A stretch of DNA of 64,000 nt from positions 90,148,001 through 90,212,000 of the forward strand of contig CM075977.1 of the NCBI GenBank assembly GCA_038087875.1. The letters are read 5' to 3'. The position numbers and the translations under genes are program-made. The notes beneath the pieces were generated by a model. The model saw only the letters and a list, made by a program, of their open reading frames with translations. It searched no databases and was not told where the DNA came from. The DNA comes from Malacoraja senta (Eukaryota). Below, in pieces: positions 3,541 to 57,529 of this stretch (its first letter is position 1; the number at the start of each line of letters is the position of its first letter).

Positions 3541-4023
3541 ATGTTTTTCTTTAGTAAGCTTCTATAACTGCTCTTTTGATGTGCTGTCTTTAGAGAACAT
3601 TGTGTTGTGTGGACATAATTCAATGCTGTTTTCACTTATTGGTCGATTAACATGTTTGAAATAAGTTGCAGTTCAAGTTAGCAACTGGCTTAAAACTTGC
3701 ATCGTTGGAGGCAATGCAAATCACACTGTTGATGCTGATTTTGTGGTTCACTGCATTTTTGACATTACAAGGGTTAAGTTGAACATTGACGTGAAACAAT
3801 GGAGTAGCAATGGGAGCAGCAGTGGCTGTTTTAATAGCACAGTAGCAGTAATAGTGAGTGTGGACAGTACTGAACTTTCTCAATGCCCCGGCAATCCAGG
3901 TTTAAAAGCAAGGATGGAAGAACATTACTGCTGATGATTTTGACAGAGTTTGAATAAAGATATCAGAAAAGTAAGGAGCCAGGAGAAAGACCGATGAGAA
4001 ATCCATCCTCAGTCACAGGTACT

Positions 4024-4565
4024 GTGGCACAGTGTTAGAGTTGCCAGAGACTACATGTGCTGTTTGTATGGAGCTTGTACTGTGACTGCGTGGGTTTTCA
4101 CTGGGTGCTCTGGTTTCCTCCCACATTCCAAAGACGTGCAGGTTTGTAAGTTGATTGGCTTCTGTAAATTGCCCCTAGTGTGTAGGATGAGAAACTGGGA
4201 TAGTAAAGAGCTAGTGTATGGATGATTGTTGGTTGGTGAACTCAGTAGGCTGAAGGGCCTGTTACCACACTGTATCTCTAAACAGGGTGGCATGGTGGTG
4301 CAGCGGTAGAGTTGTTGCCTTACAGCGCTTGCAGCACCAGAGACCCGGGTTCGGTCTCCCCATGACCGCGTTGGTCTTCTCCGAGACACTCCAAAGACGA
4401 TCAAGTTTGTAGGTTAATTGGCTTGGTATAAGTGTAAATTGTCCCCAGTGTAGGATAGAGTTAATGTAAGGAGATCGCAGGGGGGTGCGGACTCGGTGGG
4501 CTGAAAGGCTTGCTTCTGCACTGTATCTGTAAACTAAACTAAATTATAAACTAAACTAAACTACT
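4024..4565 (+). mobile_element. Two tandem HE1/V-SINE-like copies (about 4024-4283 and 4285-4565)
   Basis: tRNA-like head (ggtggtgcagcggtagagttg, gggttcg), V-domain ggtttcctcccacattccaaaga, CR1-like tail gggcctg...ctgtatctctaaa(ctaaa)n. Confidence 0.8.
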
Positions 4566-5366
4566 AAACGTGTAAAAGCAGCTGTGTGGTGCCAACATTT
4601 TGATCCATAGAGTTTAGTGAAATGTAATTTCTGAAGCACAATACAAAATATAACCACATTCATGTTAGACTTCTCCCCTGGGGTTGCTGACTGAAAGTTT
4701 CACTGAGGAAGCGACTGTTACGGGAAATTGGATCACTTTGTGATTTGAAAATCAATTTAATCCAGCATGAATGATATTGTGACCGATTTCAAGTCGAGTT
4801 CCAACAGGGCAGCACCAGTGACTCTGTTAAATCCTAATCTCAGATGCTGTAAGTGTGGAGTTTACAGGTTTTTGTTGGTTTCCTTCCACATCCCAAAGGT
4901 ATGGAGGCCTGTAAGTCAGTTGGCTTCTGTAAATTGCCTCTAGTGTGTAGGGAGTGGATGTGAAAATGGCATAAGATAGAATGTGAACAGATGATCGCGG
5001 TTGCATGGTATGAGGATGCCACTGCTCCTGGAGGAGAGAGGTGACATTTTGCGTAGCACATCGCTATCCTTGAAGGATGATGATCTGCTGACTAGCATCT
5101 CTCTGCCCATGAAGAATAGCAAACTACCTGCAGATGGTACAACATGCTCAGTTGGAACTGCAGTGTGCTCATGAGTGGCATCTGTCTGCAAACTGGTGCC
5201 TCGTGGCCTCTCACCATTCCTGATGGGCAACAACCTGCTCGCTGGCTGGCCGAGACCACCACCTCCCCAGGCAGCATGTTCCAAGTCCCCACAACTCTGT
5301 GTGGGGGAAAACAACTTGCCCCACACATTTCAACTTTTCTCCTCTTCTTCTCAAAGCTATGTGAAA

Positions 5367-5665
5367 GGGCGGCATGGTGGCGCAGCGGTAGAGTTGCTGC
5401 CTTACAATGCCAGAGACCCGGGTTCGATCCTGACTGTACGGAGTTTGTACGTTCTCCCCGTGACCGCGTGGGTTTTCTCCGAGATCTTCGGTTTCCTCCC
5501 ACGCTCCAAAGAAGTAAAGGTTTGTAGGTTTATTGGCTTGGTATAACTGTACATTGTCCCTGGTGTGTGTAGGGTAGTGTTAATGTGCCTGGATTGCTGG
5601 CCAGTGCAGAATCGGTGGGCCGATGGGCCTGTTTCCACGCTGTATCTCTAAACTAAACTAAAACT
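5367..5665 (+). mobile_element. HE1/V-SINE-like element
   Basis: A box ggtggcgcagcggtagag, B box gggttcgatcc, V-domain, (ctaaa)n tail. Confidence 0.9.
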
Positions 5666-6192
5666 GAAGATAGACACCAAAGATAGACACAAAAAGCTGG
5701 AGTAACTCAGCGGGACAATAGACAATGGGTGCTGGAGTAGGCCATTCGGCCCTTCGAGCCAGCACCGCCATTCAATGTGATCATGGCTGATCATCCCCAA
5801 TCAGTACCGCGTTCCTGCCGTCTCCCCTGACTCCGCTATTTTTAAGAGCCCTATCTAGCTCTCTCTTGGAAAGCATCCAGAGAACCTGTGGCAGAGAATT
5901 CCACAGACTCACAACTCTCTGTGATCAAAAGTGTTTCCTCGTCTCCGTTCTAAATGGCTTACTCCTTATTCTTAAACTGTGGCCCCTGGTTCTGGACTCC
6001 CCCAACATCGGCAAACATGTTTCCTGCCTCTAGCGTGTCCAAACCTTTAACAATCTTATATGTTTCTTGGACCCTTGGGTCTCGCCCCGAAACGTCACCT
6101 TCTCTCCAGAGATGCTGCCTGTCCCGCTGAGCTACTCCAGCTTTTTGTGTCTATCTTCGGTTTAAACCAGCATCTGCAGTTCCTTCTTACAT
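5666..6192. mobile_element. Palindromic Penelope-terminus element inserted in the SINE tail
   Basis: Arms gatagacacaaaaagctggagtaactcagcggg / cccgctgagctactccagctttttgtgtctatc; (aaact)n SINE tail on both sides. Confidence 0.75.
5717..6068 (-). mobile_element. CR1 3' fragment nested in the Penelope palindrome
   Basis: ggagtaggccattcggcccttcgagcc 3'UTR and reverse-strand ORF2 C-terminus similar to 20410-20780. Confidence 0.9.
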
Positions 6193-6868
6193 AAAACTAA
6201 AACTAAACTAACGTAGTTCTCCCACCCTCCCTGATCAATCGCAGACTTGCAGTGTTCTGATGGCTTTGCTTGATGGTGTAATATCTTGTTGGAATGTTTC
6301 ATGACAACTAATATGTTCTGTTTTAGAACTCAATTCCAGCGCTATGGTATTGAGAGAATTGGTGACTGAATGCTTTGGCTGGACTTGACTCTTGATCAGC
6401 AGGGGAGCAGAGGAAAATTACCATTCCTAACATTCTTCCAAAAATGAGCACAGTCTTGCCTATTCATTGAGCTATTAGTATAAAACGCAAAACAGCCTTG
6501 TGGTTAAAATACGTTATCATGGTAAACAAAGGCTGTAATTCCCCTTTATAATTTTAATTAAAAATACATACAAATTGTATTGTTGAGTTGTTCTCTTTAC
6601 TTTAAGCAGGATTAACAGAACCTATATTTTTTTGAGAAAGGCTATTTTGTTTTGCCTAAGGCTTTATTAACGATCATTATTAAAGCCAGTGCAATAATGA
6701 TCAGCCACACAGTCAAAAGGGAAAATTAATTAGTGGCCCTGATATTCCTCACTGATGACCCCGATATCTGATCGTGGCTTGTGTTGTCAACTCCAGCAGC
6801 ATGAAAACAACAGGGTGCTTTATTTGCATGAATTGATGGGCACGTGGAATTGGGTGCACTTCGAATGT

Positions 6869-7306
6869 CCTATAACAAACTCATCGGGAAGGCTAGCTCC
6901 ATCCTGGGGGCGGAGTTGGATTCATGGGAGGTGGTCTTGGAGGGGAGGATGCTCCTCAAACTGCGCAGCATCCTGGACAATACAGCTCACCCCGTACATG
7001 ACACACTGGTCAACCTGAGGAGGACCTTCAGCAGCAGACCGGTTCCACCAAGATGCAGCACAGAACGCCACAGGAGATCCTTCTTCCCTGTGGCTATCAA
7101 ACTGCACAACTCCTCCCCATTCTGTCATGGGGTAGACTGAGACTGACTCCCCCCCCCCCCCCCCAATCTTTGCACATCCCAAATCCTTTCCACTCGTCAT
7201 TTTAATTTCTTGTTTCATGTATTTTGTATTTTTGTGTTTTTATGACTGTTGCAGATCAATTGCCCTCCTAGGATAAATAAAGTTCTATCATATTGTATCG
7301 CATCGT
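6869..7306 (+). mobile_element. Rex1/Babar-type LINE 3' fragment
   Basis: Peptide NKLIGKASSILG...HPVHDTL...TERHRRSFFPVAIKLHN typical of Rex1 ORF C-terminus; tail ggataaataaagttctatc plus short repeats. Confidence 0.8.
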
Positions 7307-7657
7307 GCAATCTCCTATCATCTTCACTGTTTTCTTTAACCCCCGAAACAAGGAAGACAAAACAGCTCAATTCCAGCAAAATGAACTTGCCAACCTTGTG
7401 TGTTGCCTGGGCCTTGCAAAGTTTTCAACATACTCAGTTTTACTCAGTATACTAGCCATCACACAAGCCACAGGAGCACAACTCTGTCAAACAATAGAAT
7501 TGTAGAAGGTAGGCAAAACTTCTCACCTTGCAAGACATGAAGGAAACCATTGGAAACAAGACAAATCCTGAGAATCTCGGTTGGTAGAAAAGAAAGATCT
7601 CAAAATACATACAACCACACTGAAAGGCTTGCAGGCTTACTATTATGGGCTTGCTAA

Positions 7658-7945
7658 GGTCGGCAGAGTGGCGCAGCGGTAGACTTGCTGCCTTTCAGCA
7701 CCAGGGACACGGATTCAATCCTAACTATGGGTGCTGTCTGTACAGAGTTTGTACGTTCTTCCTGTGACCATGTTGATTTTCTCCGGGGGCTCCAGTTTCC
7801 CCCCCACACTCCAAAGACGTACAGGTTAGTAGGTTATTTTGGCTTCAGTAAAAATAGTAAATTGTCCCTAGTGTAGCATAGTGCGAGTGTATGGGGATCG
7901 CTGGTCAGCGACGGGCCTTTTTCCGCACTGTACCTCTATGCTAAA
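7658..7945 (+). mobile_element. HE1/V-SINE-like element
   Basis: Same head, V-domain and tail motifs as 5367-5665. Confidence 0.85.
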
Positions 7946-8830
7946 CTATTAGTTACTCTATTTATTACCCAGTACAACCCCCAATTATCTCTTTTTCAGG
8001 TGGTGCCTTTGGATTGAGGGTGATTTCTTTCCTTCTGAGGTGGCTGATGAGGTCAATGTAGGATCCACAGATTATTCCCTAAATATGGTAGAAGGTGCTT
8101 GATGGGACAGCTAGGTTGGGGAGGTGTGGGAGGTGGGGAGAAGATGCTGTGTGGTTTGTGAGGTGGTGCTCTCCTTCTGCCGTTTACGCAGAGTGTCCGT
8201 GCATACCCAATGGATGGACTCAAAGTCTCAGTTCCATTCGAGATGCTCATCACTAAGAGAAGGCATGAGTCAGGACTTCCATGGGGACAAATAAGATGTT
8301 GGCTTTTTTCATGAATCTTTGTTAATCACTTTTTTTTTTAAATCTCTGCTTGATAATGTCTTCCCTTGGCAGAGCTTGGAAAGGAAACACTAATTCGGAA
8401 GTCTGGTGCCAGGCTTGTAAGCCATGTGGTTTATGTTATTTTTAATAACATAAGTACTATCAGAGGTTTCTTGTTTGGGATGTTGGTCTGGTTTGTTTAT
8501 CTTCCTATTGATTCTTTTACAAGCATGTACAAAGACAACATTGGGGATAGTTCCTTGTGTCTCATTATTACCCCTACAGTAGACCACGATGTTGTGCCAG
8601 GCTTGGTATTCAAACACCCATTCCCTTGGTCAGCCAAAGACTATGCGGACGCACGGAGAGCAGTAATGAATTTGACCATCAATGTCTGCCTTCATTGAGA
8701 GGTGGTCCATGTTTTCCAGGGTATTGCCTGGAGATTTGCTGGAGTGTGCTGTTGTACAATGGGGGCAGCTCGTGAGAGGACCTTTGCCTTGCAGTTACAG
8801 AGTGTAAAGCCCATCCTCATATTTGTTTTC

Positions 8831-8927
8831 AGCCTGAAGAAGGGTCCAGCCCGGAAACGTCACCTATATTCTTTCTCCAGAGACGCTGCCTGACCCACTG
8901 AGTTACTCCAGCATCTTGGGGTATATC
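8831..8927 (+). mobile_element. Solo Penelope-terminus insert starting at the hammerhead motif
   Basis: gcctgaagaagggtccagcccggaaacgtcacc...gctgcctgacccactgagttactccagca. Confidence 0.75.
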
Positions 8928-10286
8928 TGTTAGTTGCTTTGTTGAATGTGTCAACAATGATGTGAAGCATATCTTTGAATAAATATCTGCATTGTCTGCA
9001 GGCCACAGCCTGACTAAGGTTGAGGTTACCTTGGTGTTGGAGTTTAGAAGCTGGAATCTGAATAATTTCTCATTAGGCCTGTAGATTAGTCCCACTCCAA
9101 CAGAAAGCTTGTTGTAAGTGAGGCAATGTAGTGAGACAGATTGAGAAAGGTTTTGAGGCAATGATATGGATTTCCTTGGCACTGGTCTTCACTGGCACTG
9201 CAATTCACTCTGCTATGGACCTCTGTTTGGATGTTGGCTTTCTTGCCATCATGAAATAATCGCAAAATTAAATCAATCTTCTCCACCCACCCAAATGTGG
9301 AGAGGATTCGCTACAGTTCCTGCCAGTTGATAAAGCTTTTAATGATATCAAGGGAGGAACCAATTATGACTGGAGAGCACACATGTTAGGTGGTAACTTG
9401 CTGGCGTTATGATGTAAGGATTCTCCAGCACTTTTAAGTCCATCTACAGGCCAAACTTTCCACGTTCCATCGCTCTCCAAAAACAGGTAAACTCATGAAG
9501 TCGACTCACGTTGAAAGGAACACTTTGACAACTTCCTGAATGGTGACTTTGTCCTTGCTGAGAGCTCCGTTGACTTCATGCCACAATAACCATTTCAGTC
9601 GGACTTTACTGTCACCCCTAACAGGCAGGCCATTTCCCAACTCAAAACTAAAAACTAAACTTGGTTGTAAGGAGCTTCAGTCACCAATCCATGTCCTCAT
9701 CGAGGACATCTGGGAGAGGAAGGATGAGCCTGGTGAACTCTGATCTCCTAATCAAAGCCACCCACAAGCAAGGTGACAATGTAGCCAGTTTATGACATTT
9801 CTGTGCCACCGATAAACTAAATAACCATTTCCAATATTAATAGGCATGAAACTTGGATCGGATATCTACTGGCATGGAATTACAATATGTAGTGATCATT
9901 CTATCACTTGTAACATCTAACGTCATTTATTCAAATAGTTATCTTTCCATACGAAGTTGGGAATTTGAAAAAATGAACGTAAATCCCTCTTATATCGAGC
10001 AGTGGAAGAACACCAGATTTCACCTAACCATTAATGAAATTCATTAAAAAATTATGCTGAGATACACATGGTGTAATATAAATAAATGGCTATCATTTAG
10101 GGAAAAAAACAGGTATTTCAAAATAATTGATTAAGATATGGATTTCACCCATTTCAAAAATTTAATAAAGCCCAATTAACATGAGAAATTCTTTGCATCC
10201 TACATTTAAAATTCAAAAGTCTCAAAGGAAAATCTAAAGTTTGGATTTGATTTATACAGCACTAGTCAATACCTGCAAAACATTAG

Positions 10287-20494: not shown

Positions 20495-23431
20495 TCAGTA
20501 TCCCGTACCTGCCTTCTCTCCATACCCCCTGATCCCTTTAGCCACAAGGGCCACATCTAATTCCCTCTTAAATATAGCCAATGAACTGGCCTCAACTACC
20601 CTCTGTGGCAGAGAGTTCCAGAGATTCACCACTCTCTGTGTGAAAAAGTTTTTCCTCATCTCGGTCTTAAAGGATTTCCCCCTTATCCTTAAGCTGTGAC
20701 CCCTTGTCCTGGACTTCCCCAACATCGGGAACAACCTTCCTGCATCTAGCCTGTCCAACCCCATAAGAATTTTGTACGTTTCTATAAGATCCCCTCTCAA
20801 TCTCCTAAATTCTAGCGAGTATAAGCCAAGTCTATCCAGTCTTTCTTCATATGAAAGTCCTGACATCCCAGGAATCAGTCTGGTGAACCTTCTCTGCACT
20901 CCCTCTATGGCTATAATGTCCTTCCTCAGATTTGGAGACCAAAACTGTACGCAATACTCCAGGTGTGGTCTCACCAAGACCCTGTACAACTGCAGTAGAA
21001 CCTCCCTGCTCCTATACTCAAATCCTCTTGCTATGAAGGCCAACATACCATTCGCTTTCTTCACTGCCTGCTGCACCTGCATGCCTACTTTCAATGACTG
21101 GTGTACCATGACACCCAGGTCTCGCTGCATCTCCCCATTTCCTAATCGGCCACCATTTAGATAATAGTCTGCCTTCCCGTTTTTGCTACCAAAGTGGATA
21201 ACCTCACATTTATCCACATTATACTGCATCTGCCAAACATTTGCCCACTCACCCAGCCTATCCAAGTCACCTTGCAGTCTCCTAGCATCCTCCTCACAGC
21301 TAACACTGCCCCCCAGCTTAGTGTCATCCGCAAACTTGGAGATGTTGCTTTCAATTCCCTCGTCCAGATCATTAATATAAATTGTAAATAGCTGGGGTCC
21401 CAGCACTGAGCCTTGCGGTACCCCACTACTCACTGCCTGCCATTGTGAAAAGGACCCGTTTACTCCTACTCTTTGCTTCCTGTTTGCTAGCCAGTTCTCT
21501 ATCCACATCAATACTGAACCCCCAATACCGTGTGATTTAAGTTTGTATCCTAATCTCTTATGTGGTACCTTGTCGAAAGCCTTCTGAAAGTCCAGATACA
21601 ACACATCCACTGGTTCTCCCCTATCCACTCTACTAGTTACATCCTCGAAAAATTCTATAAGATTCGTCAGACACGATTTACCTTTCGTAAATCCATGCTG
21701 ACTTTGTCCAATGATTTCACCACTTTCCAAATGTGCTGCTATCCCATCTTTAATAACTGACTCTAGCAGTTTCCCCACTACCGATGTTAGACTAACTGGT
21801 CTGTAATTCCCCGTTTTCTGTCTCCCTCCCTTCTTAAAAAGTGGGGTTACGTTTGCTACCCTCCAATCCTCAGGAACTACTCCAGAATCTAAAGAGTTTT
21901 GAAAAATTATCACTAATGCATCCACTATTTCTGGAGCTACTTCCTTAAGTACTCTGGGATGCAGCCTATCTGGCCCTGGTGATTTATCGGCCTTTAACCC
22001 ATTCAATTTACCCAACACCACTTCCCGACTAACCTGGATTTCACTCAGTTCCTCCATCTCCTTTGACCCGCGGCCCCCTGCTATTTCCGGCAAATTATTT
22101 ATGTCTTCCTTAGTGAAGACGGAACCAAAGTAGTTATTCAATTGGTCTGCCATATCCTTGTTCCCCATGATCAATTCACCTGTTTCTGACTGCAAGGGAC
22201 CTACATTTGATTTAACTAATCTCTTTCTCTTCACATATCTATAAAAACTTTTGCAGTCAGTTTTTATGTTCCCTGCCAGTTTCCTTTCATAATCTATTTT
22301 CCCTTTCCTAATTAAGCCCTTTGTCCTCCTCTGCTGGTCTCTGAATTTCTCCCAGTCCTCTGGTATGCTGCTTTTTCTGGCTAATTTGTACGCATCATCT
22401 TTTGCTTTGATACTATCCCTGATTTCCCTTGTTATCCACGGATGCACTACCTTCCTTGATTTATTCTTTTGCCAAACTGGGATGAACAATTTTTGTAGTT
22501 CATCCATGCAGTCTTTAAATGCCTTCCATTGCATATCCACCGTCAACCCTTTTAGAACTAATTGCCAGTCAATCTTGGCCAATTCACGTCTCATACCCTC
22601 AAAGTTACCTTTCTTTAAGTTCAGAACCGTTGTTTCTGAATTAACAATGTCACTCTCCATCCTAATGAAGAACTCAACCATATTATGATCACTCTTGCCC
22701 AAGGGGGCACGTACAACAAGTCTGCTAACTAACCCTTCCTCATTACTCAATACCCAGTCTAGAATAGCCTGCTCTCTCGTTGGTTCCTCTACATGTTGGT
22801 TTAGATAACTATCCCTCATACATTCCAAGAAATCCTCTTCCTCAGCACCCCTGCCAATTTGATTCACCCAATCTATATGTAGATTGAAGTCACCCATTAT
22901 AACTGTTTTGCCTTTGTTGCACGCATTTCTAATTTCCTGTTTGATGCCATCCCCAACTTCACTACTACTGCTAGGTGGCCTGTACACAACACCCACCAGC
23001 GTTTTCTGCCCCTTAGTGTTTCGCAGCTCTACCCATACCGATTCCACATCCTCCAAGCTAATGTCCTTCCTTTCCACTGCGTTAATCTCCTCTCTAACCA
23101 GCAACGCTACCCCACCTCCTTTTCCTTTCTCTCTATCCCTCCTGAATATTGAATATCCCTGGATGTTCAGCTCCCAGCCTTGGTCACCTTGGAGCCATGT
23201 CTCCGTGATCCCAACTATATCATAATCATTAATTGCTATCTGCACGTTCAACTCATCCACCTTATTACGAATGCTCCTTGCATTGAGACACAAAGCCTTC
23301 AGGCTTGTTTTTACAACGCTCTTACCCCTTATACAATTATGTTGAAAAGTGGCTCTTTTTGATTTTTGCCCTGGATTTGTCTGCCTGCCACTTTTACCTT
23401 TCACCTTGCTACCTATTGCTTCCGCCCGCAT
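20495..23431 (-). CDS. CR1 ORF2: APE endonuclease plus reverse transcriptase. First ATG at 23431; frame open upstream to about 23794
   Basis: APE motifs LNARS, GITETWL, IMGDFN, SDH; RT motifs YLDFQKAFDKV, GVPQGSVLGP, FADD; uninterrupted. Confidence 0.97.
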   Translation of the reverse strand: MRAEAIGSKVKGKSGRQTNPGQKSKRATFQHNCIRGKSVVKTSLKALCLNARSIRNKVDELNVQIAINDYDIVGITETWLQGDQGWELNIQGYSIFRRDREKGKGGGVALLVREEINAVERKDISLEDVESVWVELRNTKGQKTLVGVVYRPPSSSSEVGDGIKQEIRNACNKGKTVIMGDFNLHIDWVNQIGRGAEEEDFLECMRDSYLNQHVEEPTREQAILDWVLSNEEGLVSRLVVRAPLGKSDHNMVEFFIRMESDIVNSETTVLNLKKGNFEGMRRELAKIDWQLVLKGLTVDMQWKAFKDCMDELQKLFIPVWQKNKSRKVVHPWITREIRDSIKAKDDAYKLARKSSIPEDWEKFRDQQRRTKGLIRKGKIDYERKLAGNIKTDCKSFYRYVKRKRLVKSNVGPLQSETGELIMGNKDMADQLNNYFGSVFTKEDINNLPEIAGGRGSKEMEELSEIQVSREVVLGKLNGLKADKSPGPDRLHPRVLKEVAPEIVDALVIIFQNSLDSGVVPEDWRVANVTPLFKKGGRQKTGNYRPVSLTSVVGKLLESVIKDGIAAHLESGEIIGQSQHGFTKGKSCLTNLIEFFEDVTSRVDRGEPVDVLYLDFQKAFDKVPHKRLGYKLKSHGIGGSVLMWIENWLANRKQRVGVNGSFSQWQAVSSGVPQGSVLGPQLFTIYINDLDEGIESNISKFADDTKLGGSVSCEEDARRLQGDLDRLGEWANVWQMQYNVDKCEVIHFGSKNGKADYYLNGGRLGNGEMQRDLGVMVHQSLKVGMQVQQAVKKANGMLAFIARGFEYRSREVLLQLYRVLVRPHLEYCVQFWSPNLRKDIIAIEGVQRRFTRLIPGMSGLSYEERLDRLGLYSLEFRRLRGDLIETYKILMGLDRLDAGRLFPMLGKSRTRGHSLRIRGKSFKTEMRKNFFTQRVVNLWNSLPQRVVEASSLAIFKRELDVALVAKGIRGYGEKAGTGY

Positions 23432-23610
23432 TTTACACCCCTCTGTTTCTCTGCTCACCCATTTAAGAACCCCACCACCTCTTATTCTCTGTTTATTATT
23501 GTTTTCTTCTTTCCCCCCTACATGTTGGGTCTGAGTGCTTTCCTTCTCTGCCTCCTGCCTCACACACTGTCTAATAGCATTCTCTATTTGAGTCCCTCCC
23601 CCCAACCATT

Positions 23611-23620
23611 CTAGTTTAAA
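23611..23620 (-). promoter_or_regulatory. Candidate -1 programmed ribosomal frameshift site (U UUA AAC followed by UAG)
   Basis: Minus strand reads ACT TTA AAC TAG in the ORF1 frame; the -1 frame is the open ORF2 frame. Confidence 0.65.
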
Positions 23621-24546
23621 GTCTCCCCAGTAGCCTTTGCAGATCTCCCCGCCAGGATATCGGTCCCCCTCAGGTTCAAGTGCAACCCATCCTTTTTGTA
23701 CAGGTCGAACCTTCCACAAAAGAGGTCCCAATGATCCAGAAATTTGAATCCCTGCCTTCTGCACCAGTCCTTCAGCCACGCATTTATCCTCCACCTCGCT
23801 CCATTCCTACTCTCACTGTCGCGTGGTACAGGCAGTAATCCCGAGATTGTTACCTTTGCTGTCCTTCTCTTTAACTCCCCTCCTAACTCCCTAAATTCTC
23901 CTTTCAGGACCTCTTCTCTTTTTTTACCTATGTCATTGGTACCTATATGTATCACGACCTCGGGCTCCTCTCCCTGCCCTTTCAGGATGTCTTGGACACG
24001 TTGAGACACATCACAGACCCTGGCACCAGGGAGGCAAACTACCATCCGGGTCTCCCGACTGCGTCCACAGAATCGCCTGTCTGACCCCCTAACTATAGAG
24101 TCCCCTATTAATATTGCCCTCCTCTTCTTTTCCTTACCCTTCTGAGCAACAGGACCGGTCTCTATACCGGAGGCCCGGCCGCTGTCGCTACCCCCAGGTA
24201 GGCTGTCCACCCCAACAGTGCTCAAACAGGAGTACTTATTGTCAAGGTGTACAGCCACCGGGGTACTCTCTAGTCCCTGCCTGTGCCCCTTGCCTCTCCC
24301 AACCGTGATCCACTTGCCTGCCTCCTGTGGTGTTGGAGTGACCATATCCCTGTAACTCCTCACAATGACTTCCTCGCTCTCCCTGACCAGACGGAGGTCA
24401 TCGAGCTGCTGCTCCAGGTTCCTAATACGGTCCATTAGGAGCCCCATCTCGATACACCTGACGCAGATGTGGACGTCTGGAGGGCTATCAGACTCCATGA
24501 CTTCCCACATCTGACATCCAGAACAGTAAACTGCCCTGGCCCTCAT
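23611..24546 (-). CDS. CR1 ORF1: Cys zinc-finger, coiled coil, SGNH/GDSL esterase-like domain
   Basis: CSGC...CVRC, LLMDRIRNLEQQLDDLRL heptads, IGDS, HIGTND, DGLHLN; first ATG at 24546. Confidence 0.93.
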   Translation of the reverse strand: MRARAVYCSGCQMWEVMESDSPPDVHICVRCIEMGLLMDRIRNLEQQLDDLRLVRESEEVIVRSYRDMVTPTPQEAGKWITVGRGKGHRQGLESTPVAVHLDNKYSCLSTVGVDSLPGGSDSGRASGIETGPVAQKGKEKKRRAILIGDSIVRGSDRRFCGRSRETRMVVCLPGARVCDVSQRVQDILKGQGEEPEVVIHIGTNDIGKKREEVLKGEFRELGGELKRRTAKVTISGLLPVPRDSESRNGARWRINAWLKDWCRRQGFKFLDHWDLFCGRFDLYKKDGLHLNLRGTDILAGRSAKATGETLN

Positions 24547-24570
24547 ACTCCCCTTACCCTGGATATAATA

Positions 24571-24672
24571 CAAAACAACCTGCTACAATACAAAACAACC
24601 TGCTACAATACAAAACAAACTGCTACAATACAAAACAAACTGCTACAATACAAAACAAACTGCTACAATACA
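24571..24672. repeat. 20-bp tandem repeat (tgctacaatacaaaacaaac) in the CR1 5'UTR
   Basis: About 5 near-identical units visible. Confidence 0.95.
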
Positions 24673-47068: not shown

Positions 47069-47576
47069 TATAATGGCAGTCTTTACGATGTTCTCAAAGT
47101 CCAACTTGGATAGCCATTATTTCTCGGATGATGGTGAGGAGGTATAATTTACTCACACGACACACTTAAGATAGAAAAACGAATCTTCCAAACGTTGTTT
47201 CTTGATTAATTGGTCTTTTATTGAAGTAGTACATACCAAATAAATAATCCGTCACTTTCTGTTCTTAATCGCTGTTCCATTCATGTCATAAATCATATGA
47301 AAGTTTCTTCTTATAAAAGTATGTTGTCTCATTAACGTGTGTGCATCGTGGTCATGTCGTGTGTGTGAATGGATATAAAACTGTATTCTCACCATCCTTC
47401 CGAGACCCAACTGACTCCAAATCTATGAGTCTGCACTAGCCTCCTCTAGAAATAGACACACCCCTTCTACATATCAAATCCCACCTACAAAAATGCAGAC
47501 AAATAAAAACTAAAATATCAAAAATGTTAGACATGGCTCTAATATATATTGACTTAAGCTTAATGGCTCCTACACT
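47069..47576. other. Unclassified 508-bp insertion inside CR1
   Basis: CR1 sequence cc(c)gggaattaacc is split, with ggg on both sides; no tail or TIR. Confidence 0.65.
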
Positions 47577-47732
47577 GGGAATTAACCGTGAACCTACGCT
47601 GCACTCCCTCAATAGCAAGAATGTCCTTCCTCAAATTTGGAGACCAAAACTGCACACAATACTCCAGGGTACACACAAATGCTGGAGAAACTCAGCAGGT
47701 GCAGCAGCATCTATGGAGCGAAGGAAATAGGT

Positions 47733-47760
47733 AACGTTTCGGGCCGAAACCCTTCTTCAG
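47733..47760 (-). ncRNA. Minimal type I hammerhead ribozyme motif
   Basis: CUGAAGA-A-GGGU(UUCG)GCCC-GAAAC-GUU on the minus strand. Confidence 0.7.
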
Positions 47761-47877
47761 ACTGATAGGGGGTGGGGAGAAGAAAGGAAAAAAGGAAAAA
47801 AGGCGGAGGAGGAGCCCGAGGGCTGGGGGAGGGGAGGAGACAACCAGATGGCTTTCTTCTCCCCACCCCCTATCAGT

Positions 47878-47905
47878 CTGAAGAAGGGTTTCGGCCCGAA
47901 ACGTT
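47878..47905 (+). ncRNA. Minimal type I hammerhead ribozyme motif
   Basis: CUGAAGA-A-GGGU(UUCG)GCCC-GAAAC-GUU. Confidence 0.7.
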
Positions 47906-48475
47906 ACCTATTTCCTTCGCTCCATAGATGCTGCTGCACCCGCTGAGTTTCTCCAGCATTTGTGTGTACCTTCGATTTTCCAGCATCTGCAGTTCCTTCT
48001 TTAACACAATACTCCAGGTGTGGACTCACCAGGGCCCTATGCAACTGCAGAAGGACCTCTTTGTTCCTATACTCAACTCCTCTTGTTATGAAAGCCATTA
48101 GCTTTCTACCTGCATGCTTACTTTCAGTGACTGATGTACAGGGACACCCAAGAGCCTATTCCCATGCTGTACTTCTAAAATAAACTAAACGAAACGTGTA
48201 TTTTTAATTGTAAAAAAGGAGTTGCAGTTTATCTAAGTGGGTTTTTATATCCAAAATTTTGTTGACTTGAATAGTGCATCCCTTTATAATCATTCATCTT
48301 TGGTTGGCTATGTTGAGAAAGTAAAAGAAAATTAAAAAAAACCTGTAAAGTATGTAAATAGTCATAGAGTAATACAACATGGAAACAGGCCCTTTGGCCC
48401 AACTCGCCCATGCTGACCATAATACCCCCTTCTACAATAGTCTCACATGTCTGCATTTGGCACATATCCCACTAA

Positions 48476-57400: not shown

Positions 57401-57529
57401 AAGTCTGAAGAAGGGTCTCGACCCGAAACGTCGCCTATTCCTTCGCTCAATAGATGCACCTCACCTGCTGAGTTTCTCTAGCTTTTTTGTCTACCTTTGA
57501 TTTTTCCAGCATCTACAGTTCTTTCTTAA
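57401..57529 (+). mobile_element. Solo Penelope-terminus insert
   Basis: TSD acaaatcctattg/acaaatcatattg (57388-57400, 57530-57542). Confidence 0.88.
57405..57432 (+). ncRNA. Minimal type I hammerhead ribozyme motif with GUC site
   Basis: CUGAAGA-A-GGGU(CUCG)ACCC-GAAAC-GUC. Confidence 0.72.

What the first reader, a model, noticed from the sequence alone, without database searches (positions are those of the whole stretch)
47654..48018. 335-bp TSD-flanked palindromic retroelement with a hammerhead motif on each strand
Seen: an exact 15-bp TSD inside a CR1; 119-bp inverted arms with one mismatch around a 65-nt spacer; each arm carries CUGAAGA-A-GGGU(UUCG)GCCC-GAAAC-GUU (plus 47878-47905, minus 47733-47760). 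Established: Penelope-like elements carry minimal hammerheads in their terminal repeats and often have inverted termini; minimal hammerheads with a palindromic stem III (here AACGUU) are thought to act as dimers. Inference: this is a coding-free, rod-like RNA with a ribozyme motif in both polarities, architecturally viroid-like, mobilised by Penelope machinery. In either transcription direction the antisense arm is made first, so the ribozyme would be locked in duplex. The RNA could therefore resist self-cleavage and be a Dicer/ADAR substrate that silences its parent family. Stem I next to the core is only about 2 bp, so catalytic activity is uncertain.
Basis: partly seen in the sequence, partly recalled or inferred. 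Interest (0 to 1): 0.8.

Follow-up and report, generated by a model that had tools for sequence, protein, structure and literature searches.

The report
Truncated head-to-head Penelope-like element insertion
This is one dead, 5'-truncated insertion of a very abundant Penelope-like retrotransposon in its usual "inverted copy plus direct copy" form; it is ordinary for this cartilaginous-fish genome and is not a separate viroid-like element.

Summary
There is a 335-bp insertion at 47669-48003 with an exact 15-bp target-site duplication. Paralogous empty sites confirm the duplication. The arms are near-perfect inverted repeats, and each strand carries a minimal-hammerhead motif.

The 65-nt "spacer" is not a loop. 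In ordinary copies its reverse complement lies directly 5' of the arm. So the unit is a 183-nt inverted copy without the 3' tail, joined head-to-head to a 152-nt direct copy with a 34-nt tail.

The parent encodes RT and GIY-YIG, so it is a Penelope-like element (PLE). The 3' module occurs about 2x10^5 times in the genome, and the hammerhead 28-mer about 1.7x10^5 times.

I sampled 49 tail-bearing copies in chromosomal order. Of these, 25 are head-to-head palindromes. Twenty have their own 10-17-bp TSD, their own junction, and a tail on one arm only. The window's junction is unique in the genome, so the palindrome formed at insertion and does not amplify.

This architecture is published: Craig 2021 for the inverted copy and one-sided tail, Frangieh 2024 for the mechanism, Cervera 2014 for the ribozyme. 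The dsRNA/siRNA idea was published for Drosophila Penelope by Evgen'ev 2013. Another first-stage note in this scan (s1-200108) flagged such palindromes elsewhere in this genome.

Interest is low.

The parts
47654..47668 (.). Left copy of the 15-bp target-site duplication
   Evidence: Exact direct repeat. A single copy is present in paralogous empty sites L035-L039.
47669..47851 (-). Inverted, 5'-truncated PLE copy (183 nt). It starts at the proximal reverse-transcription start site and therefore lacks the 34-nt tail. It includes the so-called spacer 47787-47851.
   Evidence: In ordinary copies the reverse complement of 47787-47851 lies directly 5' of the arm. Inverted arms of 19 of 20 other palindromes end 28-35 nt short of the element's 3' end.
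47733..47760 (-). Minimal hammerhead motif of the inverted copy
   Evidence: Exact 28-mer match.
47852..48003 (+). Direct, 5'-truncated PLE copy (152 nt) with the tail
   Evidence: 100% identical over 152 nt to L001, and 96-99% identical to many other copies. It is collinear with the 3' end of the 1.69-kb copy L031:8313-9994, which encodes RT and GIY-YIG.
47878..47905 (+). Minimal hammerhead motif of the direct copy. The predicted cleavage site is after U47905.
   Evidence: Conservation of the core across diverged copies is shown.
47970..48003 (+). One-sided 34-nt 'tail' between the two reverse-transcription start sites
   Evidence: Present on the direct arm only. The 30-mer of the tail occurs 30,419 times in the genome, against 0 for the control. 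The one-sided 30-40-bp tail is described for PLEs (PMC8557442) and is explained by two internal RT start sites (PMC11167929).
48004..48018 (.). Right copy of the target-site duplication
47574..47668 (-). Host LINE ORF2 C-terminal fragment, left of the insertion
   Evidence: More than 700 candidate paralogues at 96-98% identity. The reconstituted site gives an open 62-aa frame that is 82% identical to ORF2 residues 917-971 of window 20495-23794(-).
48019..48110 (-). Host LINE ORF2 C-terminal fragment, right of the insertion

Best explanation
The 335-bp unit is one dead-on-arrival insertion of an endonuclease-positive Penelope-like element (PLE) into a LINE copy, made in a single integration event.

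Inferred mechanism:
1. The PLE ribonucleoprotein nicked both target strands 15 bp apart.
2. The bottom-strand 3'-OH primed reverse transcription at the distal internal start site (...CTTCTTTA-ACAC, with microhomology to the target's ACAC). This gave the 152-nt direct arm with the 34-nt tail.
3. The top-strand 3'-OH (...TCCAGG) primed a second cDNA at the proximal start site 34 nt upstream (GTGTGTAC|CTTCGA, 5 of 6 nt microhomology counting one G-U wobble). This gave the 183-nt tail-less inverted arm.
4. The two antisense cDNAs annealed at their 3' ends (2-nt CT microhomology at 47851/47852), and each served as second-strand template for the other. That yielded the palindrome flanked by the 15-bp TSD.

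The hammerhead motif is the family's ordinary pLTR minimal hammerhead. It appears on both strands only because the arm is duplicated in inverted orientation.

Shown here: the anatomy, the parentage, the empty site, the uniqueness of the junction, and the genome-wide recurrence of the same architecture. Inferred: the order of enzymatic steps and the use of two templating events.
For: Parentage: the direct arm is collinear with the 3' end of longer copies that encode an RT with YIDD and a GIY-YIG domain (Pfam GIY-YIG 2.3e-7; RVT_1 only below its Pfam cut-off, 19.8 vs 29.6 bits).

The 'spacer' belongs to the inverted copy: ordinary copies have its reverse complement directly 5' of the arm.

Insertion and TSD are confirmed by empty sites. 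The junction 47810-47895 matches in full only itself in the 1.94-Gb genome.

Census of 49 independent tail-bearing copies taken in chromosomal order:
- 25 are head-to-head.
- 20 of those have a 10-17-bp TSD around the whole unit.
- In 19 of those 20 the inverted arm ends 28-35 nt before the 3' end, so it is tail-less.
- Junctions lie 55-557 nt from the 3' end.
Incidental older palindromes in other loci show the same one-tail rule.

The inverted arm is often longer than the direct arm: 183 vs 152 nt here, 710 vs 103 in L059, 506 vs 57 in L071. The arms therefore need separate templating.

Literature:
- An inverted 5'-truncated copy plus a one-sided 30-40-bp tail is the typical PLE insertion form (PMC8557442).
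- A purified PLE protein cleaves and extends both target strands and starts reverse transcription at two adjacent internal sites that delimit the tail; hammerhead cleavage is not needed for insertion (PMC11167929).
- Opposite-strand hammerhead pairs 100-700 bp apart were already noted in Schistosoma (PMC4209133).
Against: No experiment shows that the two arms were made simultaneously or from two RNA molecules. In vitro, Frangieh et al. saw no difference in start-site use between the two strands, whereas the genomic copies here show a strict one-tail asymmetry. My sample was ascertained on tail-bearing arms, so palindromes with no tail on either arm would have been missed. The PLE clade (Neptune, Poseidon or other) was not determined. 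RVT_1 scored below Pfam's cut-off (19.8 vs 29.6 bits), because the copy examined is 5'-truncated within the RT.
Confidence: 0.9

Rival explanations
1. One reading: an independent, coding-free, rod-like, viroid-like retroelement family with a ribozyme in both polarities. It would be mobilised in trans by Penelope machinery and would act as a hairpin silencer of its parent.
For: A transcript would fold into a 118-bp near-perfect duplex. The family is transcribed somewhere, because RNA reads pile on the arm. Penelope inverted repeats do give siRNAs in transformed Drosophila (PMC3681739).
Against: The junction is unique, and every other palindrome has its own junction and TSD. The copy ends at the RT start sites and lacks the parent sequence downstream of the tail. 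Having the motif in both polarities is automatic for a palindrome. No RNA reads cover 47769-47863, and no RNA-specific A>G changes were seen.
Confidence: 0.03
2. Snap-back model: a single cDNA folded back on itself and copied itself, as in hairpin second-strand synthesis.
For: Several palindromes are nearly perfect, with both arms ending at the same position at the short palindrome CAG-N-CTG just 5' of the ribozyme (L014, L060, L063, L081, L090).
Against: In the window the inverted arm contains 65 nt that are absent from the direct arm. L059, L071, L065, L064 and L079 show the same pattern. A copy of the direct arm's cDNA should also carry the tail, but the inverted arm never does.
Confidence: 0.04
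3. Two independent PLE insertions in opposite orientation at nearly the same site, or a foldback/MITE-type DNA transposon.
For: PLE copies are extremely dense, about 1 per 10 kb.
Against: A single 15-bp TSD brackets the whole unit, and there is no inner TSD. The arms differ only at one CpG. The same architecture recurs in about half of insertions. TSD length varies from 10 to 17 bp, and the termini are asymmetric because the tail is on one side only; neither fits a DNA transposon.
Confidence: 0.02

Closest known systems
Canonical insertion architecture of endonuclease-positive Penelope-like elements (Penelope/Poseidon, Neptune, Nematis; Craig et al. 2021, PMC8557442; Frangieh et al. 2024, PMC11167929)
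   Same: It shares the strong 5' truncation, the inverted 5'-truncated copy abutting the direct copy, the 30-40-bp tail at one end only, the variable TSD, and a hammerhead in the pLTR region upstream of the ORF start. Two start sites 34 nt apart match the 'two adjacent internal RT initiation sites'.
   Different: Nothing essential differs. In this family the ORF appears to start about 40 nt after the tail (L075/L076), not at stem II as in the Anolis element. The clade was not assigned.
Minimal type-I hammerheads of PLEs (Cervera & De la Pena 2014, PMC4209133)
   Same: [quoted passage not shown]
   Different: Helix II is only 4 bp plus a tetraloop. Helix I has 2 contiguous pairs, comparable to the D. 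virilis variant. The copy number of about 1.7x10^5 is far above the 4,000-9,000 reported for coelacanth and Xenopus, although the counting methods differ.
L1 twin-priming inversions (Ostertag & Kazazian 2001; cited from my own knowledge)
   Same: Both target strands prime reverse transcription, which gives an inverted 5' segment joined to a direct 3' segment within one TSD.
   Different: In L1 the two segments are adjacent, non-overlapping parts of one RNA. Here they overlap almost completely, so two templating events starting at two defined internal sites are needed.
Non-LTR retrozymes (Cervera & De la Pena 2020, PMC7229834; Li et al. 2026 preprint, 10.64898/2026.07.22.740005)
   Same: They are short, non-coding, PLE-derived sequences carrying type-I hammerheads.
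   Different: Retrozymes are head-to-tail tandem arrays that yield circRNAs through paired ribozymes. This is a single head-to-head unit with one sense ribozyme per transcript.
Hairpin-RNA loci from inverted transposon copies (Penelope inverted repeats giving siRNAs in Drosophila, PMC3681739; maize Mu killer, cited from my own knowledge)
   Same: An inverted duplication of a transposon fragment could yield dsRNA homologous to the active family.
   Different: No expression, small-RNA or editing evidence exists for this locus.

Membership tests
Penelope-like element insertion | Derived from an element encoding an RT fused to a GIY-YIG endonuclease | tested here: met
   L031:8313-9994 is collinear with the arm. 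It has an ORF with YIDD (RVT_1 E 7e-4, below the Pfam cut-off) and a GIY-YIG domain (E 2.3e-7, above the cut-off).
Penelope-like element insertion | Target-site duplication of variable length and frequent 5' truncation | tested here: met
   The TSD here is 15 bp and is confirmed by empty sites. TSDs are 10-17 bp in 26 other copies, and 5' ends lie 41-1530 nt from the 3' end.
Penelope-like element insertion | Inverted 5'-truncated copy adjacent to the direct copy | tested here: met
   Seen in the window copy and in 25 of 49 sampled copies.
Penelope-like element insertion | A 30-40-bp tail at one end only | tested here: met
   The 34-nt tail 47970-48003 is on the direct arm only. The inverted arm ends 28-35 nt short in 19 of 20 clean palindromes.
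Hammerhead ribozyme (PLE minimal type I) | Catalytic core C3-A9, G12-A14, A15.1-U16.1, and H17 not G | tested here: met
   The sequence is CUGAAGA...GAAAC GUU. In 92 unique aligned copies each core position is kept in 86-89, and H17 is U in 63, C in 28 and G in 1.
Hammerhead ribozyme (PLE minimal type I) | Helix II closed by G10.1-C11.1, with an extra nucleotide after A9 | tested here: met
   The motif reads A-GGGU(UUCG)GCCC. The pairs are kept in 90-93% of copies, with only one-sided changes (U-G to U-A) and no double compensatory change.
Hammerhead ribozyme (PLE minimal type I) | Helix I of about 4-6 bp | tested here: not met
   There are only 2 contiguous pairs (U-A/G, G-C), then two conserved mismatches, then 2 pairs, with no covariation. 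MFE folds of the monomer and the dimer do not give the hammerhead fold.
Hammerhead ribozyme (PLE minimal type I) | Recognised by curated covariance models | tested here: not met
   No Rfam hammerhead family matches at E<=10. This is expected, because minimal variants lack helix III.
Hammerhead ribozyme (PLE minimal type I) | Self-cleavage | not testable with these tools
   Genomic 5' ends are not enriched at the predicted cleavage site: 0 of 49 direct arms start there and 2 start within 4 nt.
Non-LTR retrozyme | Head-to-tail tandem repeats with one hammerhead per unit | tested here: not met
   This is a single head-to-head unit inside one TSD.
Viroid-like RNA (Avsunviroidae type) | Circular RNA with distinct ribozymes in the plus and minus strands and RNA-to-RNA replication | tested here: not met
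   It is a DNA insertion with a TSD. The two motifs are one sequence in inverted duplicate. Circular RNA could not be tested.
L1-type twin-priming inversion | Inverted and direct segments are contiguous, non-overlapping parts of one template | tested here: not met
   The arms overlap over 118 nt.
MITE / foldback DNA transposon | Symmetric terminal inverted repeats and a fixed-length TSD | tested here: not met
   The termini are asymmetric because the tail is on one side only, and the family's TSD varies from 10 to 17 bp.

The most novel reading that the evidence does not exclude
Two things remain possible. First, the strict one-tail rule could mean that in vivo the two internal reverse-transcription start sites are used in a strand-specific way by a dimeric PLE ribonucleoprotein carrying two RNAs: the distal site on the bottom strand and the proximal site on the top strand, in about half of all insertions. 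Second, the resulting hairpin loci, which number at least tens of thousands, could be a major endogenous dsRNA/siRNA source acting back on the PLE family in this cartilaginous fish.
Probability: 0.2. Interest if true: 0.45.

Novelty: new member of a known kind. Interest (0 to 1): 0.2.

Why it matters
As a single locus it matters little, because it is one of many thousands of by-products of PLE integration. The genome-wide pattern behind it has some value. About half of the sampled insertions are TSD-flanked palindromes with exactly one tail, and the inverted arm is often longer than the direct arm. This is in vivo support for the in vitro finding that a PLE protein nicks and extends both target strands from two internal start sites. 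It also argues against snap-back synthesis. Finally, it warns annotators that 'hammerheads on both strands' and miRNA-like hairpin hits in such genomes are PLE insertion scars.

Tried and rejected
- Rfam at E<=10 gave no hammerhead hit. It gave only miRNA-family hits (mir-627, MIR1507 and others) at about half their gathering scores. These are artefacts of the long hairpin.
- Read laying on 4 runs was swamped by multi-copy reads. No contig or read spanned the junction or the flank/arm borders. All A>G differences in RNA were also present in the DNA runs, so there is no editing evidence. It is also unclear which coded organism is the source species.
- RNAfold and cofold of the sense arm gave an extended self-duplex rather than the hammerhead dimer, which is uninformative.
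- The genome-wide ratio of the arm 19-mer to the tail 19-mer (208,425 vs 178,222) was meant to estimate how many arms lack a tail. I did not use it that way, because the two words are conserved differently across subfamilies.
The census therefore rests on 49 copies.
- The frame that starts at the ATG just after the ribozyme closes after 41 codons in L075 and L076, so it is not the ORF start.
- No full-length element was recovered, and the PLE clade was not assigned.

Full report
**1. Observation**

The sequence features are real. An exact 15-mer, ACACAATACTCCAGG, flanks a 335-bp block at 47669-48003. The arms 47669-47786 and 47852-47969 are complementary with one mismatch, and 65 nt lie between them. 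The 28-nt motif CTGAAGAAGGGTTTCGGCCCGAAACGTT is exact at 47878-47905 (+) and 47733-47760 (-), where none is expected by chance.

The left flank belongs to a repeat with more than 700 candidate paralogues. In five of them the sequence runs ...AAAACTGC-ACACAATACTCCAGG-TGTGG... with a single 15-mer. The insertion and its TSD are therefore confirmed by empty sites.

The reconstituted site is an open 62-aa frame on the minus strand. It is 82% identical to residues 917-971 of a 1099-aa LINE ORF2 (Exo_endo_phos + RVT_1) at window 20495-23794. 'Inside a CR1' is thus plausible at the level of an APE-type LINE, but the clade was not tested.

**2. What it is**

A genome search with the right arm plus tail found copies at 96-100% identity. 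In ordinary copies (L001, L004-L013) the sequence directly 5' of the arm is the reverse complement of the window's 'spacer'. The spacer is therefore the continuation of the inverted copy. The unit consists of:
- an inverted copy (47851 down to 47669, 183 nt), joined head-to-head to
- a direct copy (47852-48003, 152 nt).

Only the direct copy carries the last 34 nt (47970-48003).

Longer copies align over at least 1.69 kb. They encode an RT fragment with YIDD and a GIY-YIG endonuclease. The parent is therefore an endonuclease-positive Penelope-like element (PLE).

In L075 and L076 the parental sequence continues past the tail, reading ACAC...AAGGTATGCC..., into what looks like the ORF start. 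So the tail region lies at the pLTR/5'-UTR side of the next unit, as in other PLEs.

**3. Is it a family of its own?**

No. The 86-nt junction 47810-47895 matches in full only itself; every other hit covers one half only.

The tail 30-mer occurs 30,419 times (control 0). A conserved arm 19-mer occurs 208,425 times, a tail 19-mer 178,222 times, and the degenerate hammerhead 28-mer 170,510 times.

I analysed the first 50 exact-tail copies along chromosome 1. One pair is a duplicate, which leaves 49:
- 25 are head-to-head.
- 20 of those have a 10-17-bp TSD around the whole unit.
- In 19 of those 20 the inverted arm ends 28-35 nt before the element's 3' end, so it is tail-less.
- Junction positions range from 55 to 557 nt from the 3' end.
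- The inverted arm is longer than the direct arm in six cases (for example 710 vs 103, and 506 vs 57) and shorter in two.

Palindromes found incidentally in other loci, including older subfamilies, follow the same one-tail rule. The window's element is therefore a typical member of a very large class of insertion by-products, each formed at integration.

**4. Mechanism**

The literature already describes this architecture:
[quoted passage not shown] 2021, PMC8557442).
- A purified Anolis PLE protein cleaves and extends both target strands. It initiates reverse transcription at two adjacent internal sites whose spacing equals the tail. Hammerhead mutants still insert (Frangieh et al. 2024, PMC11167929).

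Applied to this copy:
1. The bottom strand primed at the distal site, where the target's ACAC matches the element's ...TTTA-ACAC.
2. The top-strand end ...TCCAGG primed at the proximal site. It is complementary (counting one G-U wobble) to 5 of the 6 nt that follow GTGTGTAC in the template, which is why repeat finder extended the arms to 47663/47975.
3. The two antisense cDNAs met with a 2-nt overlap, and each templated the other's second strand.

Because the inverted arm holds 65 nt that the direct arm lacks, snap-back copying of a single cDNA is excluded for this copy. The enzymatic steps are inference. The anatomy and its recurrence are shown.

**5. The hammerhead**

The motif fits the PLE minimal hammerhead of Cervera & De la Pena (PMC4209133). 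[quoted passage not shown]

I aligned 92 unique copies chosen by homology, not by the motif. Core positions are kept in 86-89 of them. H17 is U or C. The variation falls in the loop, at a U-G/U-A pair and at N1.1.

Three points weaken the case for an active ribozyme:
- There is no double compensatory change.
- Helix I has only two contiguous pairs.
- Among 53 diverged copies the whole block from TCAGTCTGAAGA to the proximal start site is conserved (0.82-0.92), not the ribozyme alone. The pyrimidine tract upstream is not conserved (0.47).

Rfam does not detect the motif, and thermodynamic folds do not favour the active fold. Genomic 5' ends are not enriched at the predicted cleavage site (no direct arm starts at it and 2 of 49 start within 4 nt). 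That agrees with uncleaved RNA being the usual template. Activity remains untested.

**6.

In either transcription direction the antisense arm does come first. The RNA would form a 118-bp duplex (MFE -253 kcal/mol, z -25.7), so the ribozyme would be sequestered.

'Both polarities' is automatic for a palindrome and does not make the element viroid-like.

The idea that such inverted Penelope copies yield dsRNA and siRNAs has been published: in transformed D. melanogaster the siRNAs map exactly to the inverted regions (Evgen'ev 2013, PMC3681739).

For this locus no evidence could be obtained. RNA reads come from the multi-copy family, none cover 47769-47863, and no RNA-specific A>G change is seen.

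**7. Verdict**

This is an ordinary, recently inserted, dead PLE copy; the arms differ at one CpG, and the direct arm is identical to another copy. Novelty is limited to it being a new member of a known kind. Two other first-stage notes in this scan point the same way for this genome (s1-200108, s1-206897). My census qualifies the first: junctions cluster near the ribozyme's 5' edge but are not all there.

Noticed in passing
L048, L049, L051, L060, L063, L074, L080, L081, L083, L090, L093, L094 (window equivalent 47873-47879): There is a hot spot of 5' ends. In 12 of 49 sampled copies the direct arm starts 124-130 nt from the 3' end, within TCAGTC just 5' of CUGAAGA, and several have the TSD abutting. 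The site resembles both an initiator (TCAGTY) and a 3' splice site (long pyrimidine tract + CAG). In D. virilis Penelope an intron ends at the 5' edge of helix I (PMC4209133). The cause is unresolved: it could be a transcript start, an RT stop, or cDNA pairing at the CAG-N-CTG palindrome.
   Followed up: partly
whole genome: The PLE 3' module is extremely abundant in this 1.94-Gb cartilaginous-fish genome: about 208,000 arm words, 178,000 tail words and 170,500 minimal-hammerhead 28-mers. The hammerheads fall into two main variants, GGGU-UUCG-GCCC...GUU and GGGU-CUCG-ACCC...GUC. This far exceeds the counts published for coelacanth and Xenopus, although the methods differ.
   Followed up: partly
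window 47941-48003: The last ~30 nt of the arm and the tail look like an imperfect tandem duplication: GAGTTTCTCCAGCATTTGTGTGTACCTTC followed by GATTTTCCAGCATCTGCAGTTCCTTC. Each of the two reverse-transcription start sites may therefore belong to one repeat unit. A 34-bp repeat is also mentioned for the D. virilis Penelope promoter region (PMC2377424).
   Followed up: no
window 57405-57432 (+): A second PLE hammerhead of the other main variant (CTGAAGAAGGGTCTCGACCCGAAACGTC, with H17 = C) lies 9.4 kb downstream in the same window.
   Followed up: no
window 20495-24573 (-): A LINE copy has an open 1099-aa ORF2 (Exo_endo_phos + RVT_1) that overlaps a 320-aa upstream ORF (23611-24573). This is the element the scan's note s1-182907 refers to.
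   Followed up: partly
L075/L076 (G000 C1:8960410 and 8961371): Two tail-bearing copies 961 bp apart in direct orientation share 118 nt of parental sequence beyond the tail. This is a partial-tandem (pLTR-like) arrangement that shows how the template continues past the RT start sites.
   Followed up: partly
L090/L091 (G000 C1:12207736 and 12209712): The same palindromic insertion, with an identical TSD and 99.8% identical flanks, occurs twice 2 kb apart. This is a local segmental duplication that took place after insertion.
   Followed up: no
L031:9330-9420: A Cys-rich CX5CX2C stretch lies in the RT-EN linker just upstream of the GIY-YIG domain. It may point to a Neptune/Nematis-type PLE. That copy has a stop codon there.
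   Followed up: no
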